Virus record (IMG/VR): IMGVR_UViG_3300035181_000471
Location: 1 to 64,000 of that record
DNA: 64,000 nt
Strand: one strand, 5' to 3'
Under the pieces are notes generated by a model that did no database searches, had not been told where the DNA came from, and saw nothing but the letters and a program-made list of their open reading frames with translations. The position numbers and the translations under genes were made by a program. This document shows, one piece after another, positions 54,603 to 62,110 of the stretch (position 1 is its first letter; each line of letters starts with the position of its first letter).

Positions 54603-54680
54603 TGGTGCCCTCGGAGGAATTCGAATCCCCGATCAAGGTTTTAGAGACCCCAGCTTTAGGCCAGACTAAGCTACGAGGGC
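54603..54680 (-). tRNA. amber suppressor tRNA (anticodon CTA)
   Basis: Perfect acceptor GCCCTCG/CGAGGGC, A73, loop CT CTA AA, TTCGAAT, CCA. Confidence 0.88.
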
Positions 54681-57374: not shown

Positions 57375-57465
57375 TGGGTCCGTCCTAGGGGAGTCGAACC
57401 CCTTGTGCGTAAAATTACGCTGTGGTTTAAAAGACCACGGCCTGAACCGTGCGGCAAAGGACGGA
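57375..57465 (-). tRNA. atypical tRNA, anticodon TTT (Lys), long variable arm, 8-bp acceptor
   Basis: GTGGT-CT TTT AA-ACCAC; V arm GCGTAA/TTACGC; TCCGTCCT/AGGACGGA. Confidence 0.8.
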
Positions 57466-58208: not shown

Positions 58209-58279
58209 TGGAAGGGCTGTAGGGAATCGAACCCTATCTGTTCGCTTCAAAGGCGAATCTGTCATCCTGTCTCAACCCT
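58209..58279 (-). tRNA. tRNA-Gln(TTG) with degenerate D arm
   Basis: TTCGC-CT TTG AA-GCGAA, good T arm, no clear D stem. Confidence 0.7.
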
Positions 58280-58378: not shown

Positions 58379-58460
58379 TGGCTCTCCATGTAGGAATCGA
58401 ACCTACTTAGCTTGCGCGACTGGTTAACAGCCAGTTACCGACCCGGACAGTATATGGAGA
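58379..58460 (-). tRNA. atypical tRNA-Asn(GTT) with extended variable arm
   Basis: ACTGG-CT GTT AA-CCAGT; V region with GC-GCAA-GC. Confidence 0.78.
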
Positions 58461-58525
58461 ATGAATTTCTTAGATAGTGGCCGTTGATCCACTTACGCTC
58501 TGTCGCTCAGTGCAGAGTATCTGTT

Positions 58526-58601: not shown

Positions 58602-58671
58602 ATAAATACAGCACCCGGCACACTGGCTCTTTTACGCATACGCGACCTGTAGCCTGACGGTGTTGTGATTT

Positions 58672-58733
58672 TGGTGGATACAGTGGGTATTGAACCCACC
58701 TAGGGAGCTACCCTACTCGCCTTGAGTGTACCC
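58672..58733 (-). ncRNA. 62-nt mini-tRNA with Ala identity
   Basis: GGGTACA/TGTATCC (G3.U70), A73, CCA, T arm TTCAATA, 5-nt loop TAGCT. Confidence 0.7.
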
Positions 58734-58738
58734 ATGAT

Positions 58739-58825
58739 CGGTGATCCCAAGGGGAGTCGAACCCCTACAGTCGAGGACGCCTGGGTAAGAGCCAGGGGTG
58801 GTAGCCAGTTGCCACTATTGGGACC
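58739..58825 (-). tRNA. atypical tRNA, anticodon CTT (Lys), long V arm, foldable as 8/4, no encoded CCA
   Basis: CCTGG-CT CTT AC-CCAGG; V arm GTC/GAC; GGTCCCAA/TTGGGATC; ends ACCG. Confidence 0.75.
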
Positions 58826-60405: not shown

Positions 60406-60505
60406 ATCATCTGGATGGAGTCGAACCATCGGCCACCCGGAGTCCCCTGCAATTTGGTCCTTAACCGTGAGAGGTGGTGCGCTCTGACCGCTGAGCTACA
60501 AATGA
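60406..60505 (-). ncRNA. tRNA-like RNA with expanded anticodon domain
   Basis: Canonical acceptor, D and T arms; about 50 nt between D and T arms; no CCA. Confidence 0.65.
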
Positions 60506-61278: not shown

Positions 61279-61354
61279 TGGTGGAGCCATCGGGAGTTCA
61301 ACCCGATCCACTAGACTGCGAAACTAGTATGCCACGCCTCAACACTTTGGCCCC
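61279..61354 (-). tRNA. tRNA-Ala(CGC)
   Basis: Loop TT CGC AG, G3.U70, T31-T39 mismatch. Confidence 0.8.
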
Positions 61355-62035: not shown

Positions 62036-62110
62036 TGGTGGAGCTACGGGGAGTCGAACCCCGAACTTTTGGATGCCGTCCAAATGTGTTCCCGCTAGCA
62101 CTATAGCCCC
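62036..62110 (-). tRNA. tRNA-Ala(GGC), C33
   Basis: Loop AC GGC AT, G3.U70. Confidence 0.85.

What the first reader, a model, noticed from the sequence alone, without database searches (positions are those of the whole stretch)
58672..58733. 62-nt mini-tRNA with full alanine identity and no usable anticodon loop
Seen: G1-C72, G2-C71, G3.U70, A73, encoded CCA and a normal T arm, but no 8-9 connector, a 3-bp D hairpin, a 5-bp stem with a 5-nt loop (UAGCU) and a 1-nt V loop. Known: AlaRS needs only G3.U70/A73, and the tmRNA tRNA-like domain is alanylated the same way. Inference: an alanylated mimic resembling tmRNA without its message domain (SmpB/EF-Tu decoy, untagged rescue, or a non-ribosomal Ala donor).
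Basis: partly seen in the sequence, partly recalled or inferred. Interest (0 to 1): 0.78.

Follow-up and report, generated by a model that had tools for sequence, protein, structure and literature searches.

The report
Miniature alanine tRNA in a phage
A jumbo phage's tRNA gene cluster holds a real 62-base shrunken alanine tRNA that keeps what is needed for alanine charging and still has an alanine anticodon in its loop; it derives from tRNA-Ala, not tmRNA, and whether it works is untested.

Summary
Window 58672-58733(-) encodes a 62-nt tRNA-like RNA with G1-C72, G2-C71, G3.U70, A73, encoded CCA, a perfect T arm, a 3-bp hairpin abutting the acceptor stem, a 5-bp/5-nt hairpin and one base before the T arm. 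It lies in a ~40-gene minus-strand tRNA array of a 221-kb phage, and three DNA runs confirm it.

The "unusable" hairpin is a full 17-nt anticodon arm: G27.G43, a Watson-Crick 32:38 pair, and the loop U33-AGC-U37. AGC is an alanine anticodon, cognate to GCU, the phage's commonest Ala codon, and the only Ala anticodon otherwise missing from the array.

A distant relative carries a 72-nt counterpart with the same architecture and the loop U-CGC-U. Half of the 20 shared pairs differ by double compensatory changes, and none is broken.

The element lacks the tmRNA tRNA-like-domain hallmark. That hallmark is present in the known TLD-only RNA of mycobacteriophage DS6A and in other phage minis found here.

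In the window's lineage the mini is a precise ~66-nt, strain-variable insertion, not a recent deletion of a resident tRNA-Ala. No RNA evidence exists.

Best reading: a miniaturised, alanine-chargeable tRNA-Ala derivative. Decoding is unproven, and an inert relic is not excluded.

The parts
58672..58733 (-). 62-nt mini tRNA-Ala gene (58 nt plus A73 plus encoded CCA)
   Evidence: Sequence and fold. Only element under 67 nt in the structural scan. Confirmed in contigs from three DNA runs.
58727..58733 (-). Acceptor 5' strand GGGUACA (G1, G2, G3)
   Evidence: Pairs 7/7 with 58676-58682, including G3.U70.
58716..58726 (-). D-replacement hairpin CUC-AAGGC-GAG, abutting the acceptor stem; the loop contains GG
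   Evidence: MFE fold. All three pairs are replaced by other pairs in the L007 counterpart.
58700..58716 (-). 17-nt anticodon arm G27.G43 / UAGG-CCUA / G32-C38 / loop U33-AGC-U37 (58716 is shared with the hairpin above)
   Evidence: Positional homology with the anticodon arms of seven normal tRNA-Ala genes. Same layout in the L007 mini.
58707..58709 (-). AGC triplet at anticodon positions 34-36 (alanine; cognate codon GCU)
   Evidence: Alignment A4 has G35 and C36 invariant across nine sequences. GCU is 43% of Ala codons.
58683..58699 (-). T arm GUGGG-UUCAAUA-CCCAC
58672..58682 (-). Acceptor 3' strand UGUAUCC (U70, C71, C72), A73, encoded CCA
   Evidence: Nearly every tRNA in the array also encodes CCA.
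58668..58671 (-). AAAT, the 3' end of the ~66-nt unit present in the window and absent in L007 and L097
   Evidence: Junction alignment A3. An X3 variant contig joins directly to 58671.
58740..58825 (-). Upstream neighbour, 6 nt away: 86-nt tRNA with a long variable arm and anticodon CUU; ends ACCG here
58608..58662 (-). Downstream neighbour: 55-nt element 96% identical to L007 3152-3206
   Evidence: (E = 8e-21).
61279..61354 (-). Uncalled tRNA-Ala(CGC) with G56 in the T loop; completes the array's Ala anticodon set
   Evidence: CM hit and fold/sequence.

Best explanation
The element is a miniaturised derivative of a tRNA-Ala gene. It is carried as a strain-variable cargo module in the co-oriented tRNA array of a ~221-kb freshwater/sediment jumbo phage. 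Its nearest cultured relative is an Acidobacteriota phage. The canonical D arm is replaced by a 3-bp hairpin and the variable loop is gone. It keeps (i) an intact 12-bp acceptor/T coaxial helix with a 5' leader and encoded CCA, which is what RNase P needs; (ii) the full AlaRS identity set G3.U70, A73, G2-C71 and G1-C72; and (iii) a canonical-length anticodon arm whose loop reads U33-AGC-U37. I infer that it is transcribed with the array, cut out like its neighbours, and charged with alanine by the host AlaRS. The most likely role is a supplementary Ala acceptor of tRNA lineage. It could be a weak GCU-reading isoacceptor, because it supplies the only Ala anticodon the array otherwise lacks. Failing that, it would be an Ala-tRNA-like molecule used off the decoding pathway. 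Shown here: the sequence and structure, its reality in DNA, its tRNA-Ala ancestry, the shared architecture with compensatory changes in a distant relative, and its insertion status. Inferred: expression, processing, charging, and any ribosomal role.
For: The structure and identity elements are exact. The chance expectation is about 0. Spacing to the upstream tRNA is 6 nt, like other adjacent gene pairs in the array. The GC of the loop aligns to anticodon positions 35-36 of seven normal tRNA-Ala genes, and only the variable-loop columns are missing. L007/L087/L088, from a phage whose array-embedded protein is about 51% identical, carry a counterpart. It has the same acceptor identity, a hairpin abutting the acceptor, G27.G43, a Watson-Crick 32:38 pair, the loop U-CGC-U, and a single G before the T arm. 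Of 20 shared pairs, 10 are identical, 10 are double compensatory, 0 are one-sided and 0 are broken. The loop differs only at wobble position 34. A CM built from the window's mini alone ranks the L007 mini (36.6 bits) above every normal tRNA in 345 kb of arrays. No resident or relative tRNA-Ala shares its acceptor or T arm, so it is not a fresh deletion of a neighbour. The array otherwise has UGC twice, GGC and CGC, so AGC completes the set, and GCU is the top Ala codon at 43%. The same phage group keeps a 67-nt D-arm-reduced tRNA-Gln(UUG) with compensatory acceptor changes, so reduced tRNAs are tolerated in this system. From established knowledge: AlaRS charges Ala minihelices on G3.U70, and EF-Tu binds the acceptor/T helix.
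Against: There is no RNA evidence. The one metatranscriptome contig comes from a relative and diverges where the mini starts. The mini is absent from the syntenic site in the closest relatives (L096, L097, an X3 variant), so it is dispensable. Only two sequence types of this architecture are known. If they arose independently, the 'compensatory' stem differences mean little. U37 in place of a purine, the G32-C38 pair closing a 5-nt loop in the MFE, A34 (rare in bacteria), the absent D stem and the absent variable loop all argue against efficient decoding on a bacterial ribosome. ARAGORN and the Rfam tRNA model both reject it.
Confidence: 0.55

Rival explanations
1. It is an inert relic: a decayed tRNA-Ala pseudogene that hitch-hikes in a highly plastic array, with no function and no selection.
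For: It is absent at the syntenic site in L096, L097, L007 and an X3 co-occurring variant. The array shows other whole-gene indel polymorphisms, such as the joint 58378->58526. tRNA finders reject it. There is no expression evidence.
Against: All 20 pairs are intact, while neighbouring spacers diverge to near-random between relatives whose tRNAs are ~98% identical. No recognisable parent exists. The same odd architecture, including G27.G43, a Watson-Crick 32:38 pair, U37, no variable loop, and a U-NGC-U loop differing only at the wobble base, recurs in a distant relative with 10 double changes and no broken pair.
Confidence: 0.3
2. It is a tmRNA mimic: a TLD-only RNA that is alanylated and titrates SmpB/EF-Tu or rescues ribosomes without tagging, like the TLD-only RNA of mycobacteriophage DS6A.
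For: It shares G3.U70, A73, CCA and a T arm with the tmRNA TLD. TLD-only RNAs exist in phages (PMC4131195, PMC11915505; DS6A element located). Further TLD-like ~62-65-nt minis were found in IMG/VR phages (L105, L029, L139/L180).
Against: It lacks the unpaired D-loop analogue ending in GGUCGAC/GGUUCGAC that DS6A, L105 and L029 carry. It has two hairpins where SmpB would sit. Its second hairpin is positionally an anticodon arm with an Ala anticodon. Rfam tmRNA models give only noise.
Confidence: 0.05
3. It is a processing punctuation mark: a tRNA-shaped RNase P/3'-trimming signal, like mascRNA at the MALAT1 3' end. Its job would be to define the ends of neighbouring RNAs such as the conserved 55-nt element downstream, with charging irrelevant.
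For: Its helix layout matches the Rfam mascRNA-menRNA consensus: a 7-bp acceptor directly followed by a 3-bp hairpin, a second hairpin and a T arm with no variable loop (consensus line shown). It sits between a tRNA and a 55-nt element that is 96% conserved in L007.
Against: L007 and L097 have the 55-nt or equivalent element directly after the tRNA with no mini, so it is not needed for that purpose. This reading does not explain the retained AlaRS identity set or the NGC triplet. The mascRNA model does not hit the mini itself.
Confidence: 0.1

Closest known systems
Canonical bacterial/phage tRNA-Ala (Rfam RF00005)
   Same: Acceptor stem with G3.U70, G2-C71, G1-C72 and A73; encoded CCA; T arm; 17-nt anticodon arm with U33 and an NGC anticodon. 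Aligns column for column with seven tRNA-Ala genes of this phage group.
   Different: No D stem or 8-9 connector, no variable loop, U37 instead of a purine, a Watson-Crick 32:38 pair, a G27.G43 mismatch. No Rfam tRNA match listed at E<=10 and not called by ARAGORN.
Mitochondrial D-armless / armless tRNAs (e.g. mt-tRNA-Ser(AGY), nematode and mite minimal tRNAs; PMC7609411, PMC9427863, PMC12221289)
   Same: A functional tRNA class in which the D arm is replaced by a short element and the core is reduced; similar length of about 55-62 nt.
   Different: Those work with co-adapted mitochondrial EF-Tu, synthetases and ribosomes. They have a normal 7-nt anticodon loop with a purine at 37. None is described from a phage or bacterium.
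TLD-only tmRNA of mycobacteriophage DS6A (PMC4131195; PMC11915505)
   Same: A phage-encoded short RNA with an Ala-identity acceptor stem and T arm and no message domain.
   Different: DS6A (L337 28478-28556) has the tmRNA D-loop analogue ...GGUCGAC and a P2 helix, no anticodon-like triplet and no encoded CCA. The window's mini has none of the TLD hallmarks and derives from tRNA-Ala.
mascRNA / MEN-beta tRNA-like small RNA (Rfam RF01684)
   Same: Nearly the same helix layout: 7-bp acceptor, a 3-bp hairpin with no connector, a small anticodon-like hairpin, a T arm with no variable loop, about 60 nt.
   Different: A vertebrate nuclear lncRNA product that is not aminoacylated. No sequence relationship, and the RF01684 model does not match the mini.
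Ala minihelix / microhelix substrates of AlaRS (Francklyn & Schimmel 1989; from my own knowledge, not checked here)
   Same: The acceptor/T helix with G3.U70 and A73 suffices for alanylation, which is the basis for inferring charging.
   Different: Those are synthetic. This is a natural gene that keeps two further hairpins.

Membership tests
Canonical tRNA (RF00005 / ARAGORN) | Cloverleaf with D arm, 7-nt anticodon loop and a variable loop of at least 4 nt; scores above the family threshold | tested here: not met
   Not called by ARAGORN. No RF00005 match at gathering threshold or at E<=10.
tRNA-Ala lineage (descent, not canonical form) | G3.U70, A73 and G2-C71 identity set, and an NGC triplet at positions 34-36 after U33 | tested here: met
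   Sequence. MAFFT with seven tRNA-Ala genes puts the GC in the 35-36 columns.
tRNA-Ala lineage (function) | Aminoacylation with alanine by AlaRS | not testable with these tools
   Inferred only from the identity elements.
tmRNA tRNA-like domain / TLD-only RNA | Unpaired D-loop analogue with the conserved ...GG(U/A)U(U)CGAC motif after the acceptor stem | tested here: not met
   The mini has CUCAAGGCGAG forming a hairpin. DS6A, L105 and L029 carry the motif.
tmRNA tRNA-like domain / TLD-only RNA | Match to tmRNA covariance models | tested here: not met
   Only tmRNA_permuted at 14.8 bits, E = 1.7, partly overlapping.
tmRNA tRNA-like domain / TLD-only RNA | SmpB binding | not testable with these tools
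mascRNA-like tRNA mimic (RF01684) | Match to the family model | tested here: not met
   RF01684 hits the neighbouring 86-nt tRNA weakly (24 bits) and does not hit the mini. The resemblance is in layout only.
tRNA gene fragment / att-site remnant | Only a 5' or 3' part of a tRNA, usually next to an integrase or island boundary | tested here: not met
   Both acceptor strands are present and pair 7/7. It lies inside an array with no integrase nearby.
Recent deletion derivative of a resident tRNA-Ala | A full-length tRNA-Ala with the same acceptor and T arm, at this site in relatives or elsewhere in the array | tested here: not met
   Relatives have no gene at the site. No tRNA in any locus shares more than 19 nt with it. 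Alignment A4.
V-loop-less mini tRNA-Ala (provisional family: window + L007 type) | Shared architecture maintained through compensatory changes | tested here: inconclusive
   20 pairs: 10 double changes, 0 broken. The CM ranks L007 first. But there are only two independent sequence types.

The most novel reading that the evidence does not exclude
The window's mini and the L007-type mini belong to a lineage of variable-loop-less, D-arm-less tRNA-Ala genes that are charged and used by phages in bacterial cells. They would act either as the first 'mitochondrion-style' minimal tRNAs shown to decode (GCN) on a bacterial ribosome, or as dedicated alanyl carriers or decoys that bypass or blunt host tRNA-targeting defences.
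Probability: 0.2. Interest if true: 0.85.

Novelty: new variant of a known kind. Interest (0 to 1): 0.55.

Why it matters
Standard tRNA finders miss this element, so phage tRNA inventories under-count such genes. The same array also hides an uncalled tRNA-Ala(CGC). If the mini is charged and used, it shows how far a tRNA can be reduced and still work with bacterial machinery, a question so far addressed only in mitochondria and with synthetic minihelices. It would also add to the ways large phages rebuild or protect the translation apparatus. Separately, the pattern scans show that short Ala-identity tRNA-like and TLD-like RNAs recur in unrelated large phages. That makes the single DS6A TLD-only case look like part of a wider, unexplored class.

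Tried and rejected
(1) GenBank phages by blastn: only generic tRNA matches.
(2) IMG/VR by exact 33-mer, by three array-embedded proteins and by the invariant 30-mer of the neighbouring tRNA: only the source contig itself.
(3) Pattern A, which forces U-NGC-U, a 1-nt V and TCCACCA. In IMG/VR there were 71 hits; only the window's own element passes all structural filters and L029 is TLD-like. The L007 element that also passes came from a protein look-up, not from IMG/VR.
(5) Metagenome scan with the 273-aa family: only L007-type strains and distant phages.
(6) Contexts of more distant homologues (P0009, P0010) have no array. P0002, P0006 and P0037 had no DNA. The P0004 and P0005 contigs are too short upstream.
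(7) Neighbour ORF of the L007 mini: no homologues.
(8) RNA runs: one weak holder, from a relative, not covering the mini.
(9) Tunturi_5: no tRNAs in the region examined and no DNA similarity.
(10) Rejected: protein-coding reading, because the short ORFs overlapping the mini also overlap tRNA genes. Rejected: assembly artefact. Rejected: promoter or terminator role, because none is adjacent.
(11) MAFFT of the two minis alone misplaces the 10-nt gap, so the CM was built from the window sequence with a given structure.

Full report
WHAT IS THERE. The window is positions 1-64000 of IMGVR_UViG_3300035181_000471, a 221-kb viral contig. All large ORFs lie on the minus strand. They include a large terminase, helicase, exonuclease and GMP-reductase-like genes. 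The best cultured match of the terminase is the 309-kb Tunturiibacter (Acidobacteriota) phage Tunturi_5, at 45.5% identity. From about 53.6 to 64.2 kb there is a minus-strand array of about 40 tRNA genes interleaved with small ORFs. Nearly all of these tRNA genes encode CCA.

THE OBSERVATION. The minus strand of 58672-58733 reads GGGUACA CUCAAGGCGAG UAGGG UAGCU CCCUA G GUGGG UUCAAUA CCCAC UGUAUCC A CCA. ARAGORN and Rfam do not call it. I wrote an identity-blind scanner requiring a 7/7 acceptor, an adjacent 5/5 T arm, a TTCRA loop and NCCA. It finds 36 elements in the window. All are minus-strand array members, and this one is the only element under 67 nt. In 200 dinucleotide shuffles it finds none. 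Contigs assembled from three DNA runs of sediment and microbial-mat metagenomes span the element with no differences.

WHAT THE SECOND HAIRPIN IS. MAFFT of the mini with seven normal tRNA-Ala genes from this phage group puts the loop's G-C in the invariant anticodon 35-36 columns. It leaves a gap exactly at the variable loop. Read this way, G18...G34 is a canonical-length 17-nt anticodon arm. It has a G27.G43 mismatch, four pairs, a Watson-Crick-capable G32-C38, and U33-A34-G35-C36-U37. AGC is an alanine anticodon. The description 'no usable anticodon loop' is therefore too strong. The arm is aberrant (U37, a closed 32:38 pair), but it is an Ala anticodon arm by descent.

The array otherwise holds Ala anticodons UGC twice and GGC (the GGC gene has an unusual C33). 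It also holds CGC on an uncalled gene I found at 61279-61354, whose T loop has G56. AGC is the one Ala anticodon missing. Its cognate codon GCU is the commonest Ala codon in the window's genes, at 43%.

RELATIVES. Homologues of the array-embedded 273-aa 2H-phosphoesterase-like protein and of the 122-aa ORF just upstream gave related arrays at several distances.

(a) L007, L087 and L088 come from one phage species whose 273-aa protein is 51-53% identical. They carry a 72-nt element that ARAGORN and Rfam also miss, directly after tRNA-Ala(GGC): GGGCCUA GCGUAUAACGC CGUAUGGAAG UUGGU UCGCU ACCGA G CAGGG UUCGAAU CCCUG UAGGUCC A CCA. It shares these features with the window's mini:
- G1-C72, G2-C71, G3.U70, A73 and CCA;
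- a 3-bp/5-nt hairpin abutting the acceptor stem;
- G27.G43 and a Watson-Crick 32:38 pair;
- U33 and U37;
- a single G before the T arm.
Its loop triplet is CGC, again alanine. Of the 20 shared pairs, 10 are identical, 10 differ on both sides, none differs on one side and none is broken. The loop differs only at wobble position 34. A covariance model built from the window's sequence alone ranks this element first among non-self hits in 345 kb of arrays. It scores 36.6 bits, against at most 30.2 for any normal tRNA and at most 29.2 for any normal tRNA-Ala.

(b) At the syntenic site, the closest relatives do not have the mini. L096 has a 122-aa ORF 85% identical and flanking tRNAs about 98% identical. 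L097 is at 72%. Both carry other sequence between the same two tRNAs. The junctions are clean. L097 reads ...ACCA.TCAT|CACAACA..., L007 reads ...ACCA.AT|CAGCACC..., and the window reads ...ACCG.ATCAT|[mini+AAAT]|CACAACACC.... Run X3 also holds a co-occurring variant contig that joins a variant of the upstream tRNA directly to 58671.

The mini is therefore a precise ~66-nt insertion that is polymorphic among strains. It is not what is left of a full-length tRNA-Ala at this site. No tRNA in any fetched locus shares its acceptor or T arm, so no recent parent is visible.

EXPRESSION. No promoter-like or terminator-like site flanks the mini. It sits 6 nt after the preceding tRNA, as other adjacent pairs in the array do. 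One metatranscriptome holds a 151-nt contig from a relative covering the upstream tRNA. That contig diverges where the mini begins. There is thus no RNA evidence for the mini, either for or against.

COMPARISON WITH WHAT IS KNOWN. I found no description of a phage or bacterial tRNA of this form. The tmRNA literature lists a 'TLD only' sequence in mycobacteriophage DS6A and notes that a similar molecule strongly inhibits tmRNA, perhaps by titrating SmpB (PMC4131195; PMC11915505). I located the DS6A element at L337 28478-28556. It reads GGGGCCG CAAUGGUGGUCGAC, then a P2 hairpin, then GCGAG UUCGAUU CUCGC CGGCUCC A.

My pattern scans of IMG/VR also turned up further Ala-identity minis of about 62-65 nt in unrelated phages. 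Some carry the TLD hallmark:
- L105 (GGGGGUGACUUGGGUUCGAC...);
- L029 (...ACGGAUUUGAC...);
- L139/L180.
Others do not:
- L211, which has the same four-helix, no-linker fold as the window's mini;
- L130, inside the array of a 463-kb phage;
- L169, where the D arm is kept and the anticodon arm is lost;
- L141, next to a permuted tmRNA call.

The window's mini lacks the TLD motif. It has hairpins where the unpaired D-loop analogue should be, and tmRNA models do not match it. I therefore do not file it as a TLD-only RNA. By architecture it is closest to mitochondrial D-armless tRNAs, and in pure helix layout to mascRNA (consensus line). It belongs to neither family.

A caveat on Ala enrichment: my patterns forced Ala identity, and one bystander mini with a Pro-like acceptor exists (L184). 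In the protein-ascertained arrays of the window's own group, which are unbiased, the only two minis are both Ala.

HOW IT MOST LIKELY WORKS. Shown:
- a tRNA-Ala-derived gene with an intact acceptor/T helix, the full AlaRS identity set, encoded CCA and a retained Ala anticodon arm;
- an equivalent in a distant relative with all pairs maintained through double changes;
- strain-variable presence.
Inferred from established knowledge: RNase P needs only the acceptor/T helix, AlaRS charges G3.U70 minihelices, and EF-Tu binds the aminoacyl-acceptor/T helix. The RNA should therefore be excised, alanylated and bound by EF-Tu.

Whether it decodes is open. In favour: U33, G35 and C36 are conserved with variation only at position 34; the arm has canonical length; AGC fills the gap in the array's Ala set and matches the top Ala codon; and this phage group keeps another reduced tRNA, a 67-nt Gln(UUG), with compensatory changes. 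Against: U37, the closed 32:38 pair, A34, and a core with no D stem or variable loop facing an unadapted bacterial ribosome.

My estimates are:
- functional Ala-accepting mini-tRNA, about 0.55 (split roughly evenly between weak decoder and non-decoding Ala carrier);
- inert relic, about 0.3;
- processing signal, about 0.1;
- tmRNA/SmpB mimic, about 0.05.

VERDICT. It is of moderate interest because the family evidence rests on two sequence types and nothing is known about expression.

Noticed in passing
window 61279-61354 (-): A 76-nt tRNA-Ala(CGC) missed by ARAGORN and by Rfam at gathering threshold. It has GGGGCCA/UGGCUCC with G3.U70, A73 and CCA, the anticodon loop UUCGCAG, and the T loop UUGAACU (G56 in place of C56).
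   Followed up: partly
window 58608-58662 (-); L007 3152-3206: A 55-nt element right after the long-variable-arm tRNA is 96% identical between phages whose proteins are about 51% identical (E = 8e-21). Its ends can pair (CAGCACC/GGUGCUG), but the MFE z-scores are not significant. Function unknown.
   Followed up: partly
window 58740-58825 (-); L007 3058-3146; L096 683-769; L097 4261-4347: A conserved 86-89-nt tRNA with a long variable arm (class II shape), A73 and the anticodon CUU (Lys codon AAG), next to an ordinary tRNA-Lys(CUU). A class II body with a Lys anticodon suggests possible non-Lys charging. In the window it ends ACCG instead of ACCA.
   Followed up: no
window 57375-57465 (-); L007 9629-9717: A 91-nt tRNA with anticodon UUU that Rfam scores as tRNA-Sec-like in L007 (43 bits, threshold 47). 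It has a long acceptor helix and an extra arm, is nearly identical in the two phages, and folds with z = -4.2. It may be an allo-tRNA-like species.
   Followed up: no
window 58212-58279 (-); L096 1514-1584; L007 4101-4171: A 67-nt tRNA-Gln(UUG) with no proper D stem, conserved across the phage group with double compensatory changes in the acceptor stem. Reduced tRNAs are evidently tolerated in this system.
   Followed up: partly
window 54603-54680 (-); L005 4705-4780; L007 12595-12670: A conserved amber-suppressor tRNA (anticodon CUA). TAG is still used as a stop in the window (10 of 57 genes), and coding density under the standard code is 81%.
   Followed up: partly
window 62036-62110 (-): The tRNA-Ala(GGC) has the anticodon loop ACGGCAU, that is C33 instead of the near-universal U33. 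Relatives have U33.
   Followed up: no
window 58379-58525 (-): Contigs in three DNA runs skip 58379-58525 (147 nt), removing the odd 82-nt tRNA-Asn(GUU) with a long variable arm. This is whole-gene indel polymorphism within the array.
   Followed up: no
L105 8793-8854(-), L029 1795-1859(-), L139 6818-6879(-), L180 843-904(-): 62-65-nt RNAs in unrelated IMG/VR phages with an Ala acceptor, T arm, CCA and the tmRNA D-loop hallmark (e.g. GGGGGUGACUUGGGUUCGAC), but only a short hairpin in place of P2 and the message domain. They look like further TLD-only tmRNAs of the DS6A kind.
   Followed up: partly
L211 820-881(+), L130 5676-5737(+), L169 10164-10225(+), L141 451-512(+), L184 2817-2878(+): Other 62-nt tRNA-like minis without the TLD motif. 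L211 has the same four-helix, no-linker fold. L130 and L169 sit in tRNA arrays of 463-kb and 136-kb phages. L141 lies 40 nt upstream of a permuted tmRNA call. L184 has a Pro-like C1-G72 acceptor, so minis are not limited to Ala.
   Followed up: partly
window 60406-60505 (-); L007 2571-2669: A ~99-nt tRNA match with a long insertion after the anticodon region (possible intron), ending UCAA with no encoded CCA. In L007 its counterpart follows the mini by 2 nt.
   Followed up: no
L096 770-1054; L097 4445-4735: A ~285-nt non-coding segment conserved between L096 and L097 occupies the slot where the window has the mini. It contains a GGAUCACC direct repeat of the upstream tRNA's 3' end and a hairpin with a CUCUUAA loop (a Lys-CUU-like remnant).
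   Followed up: no
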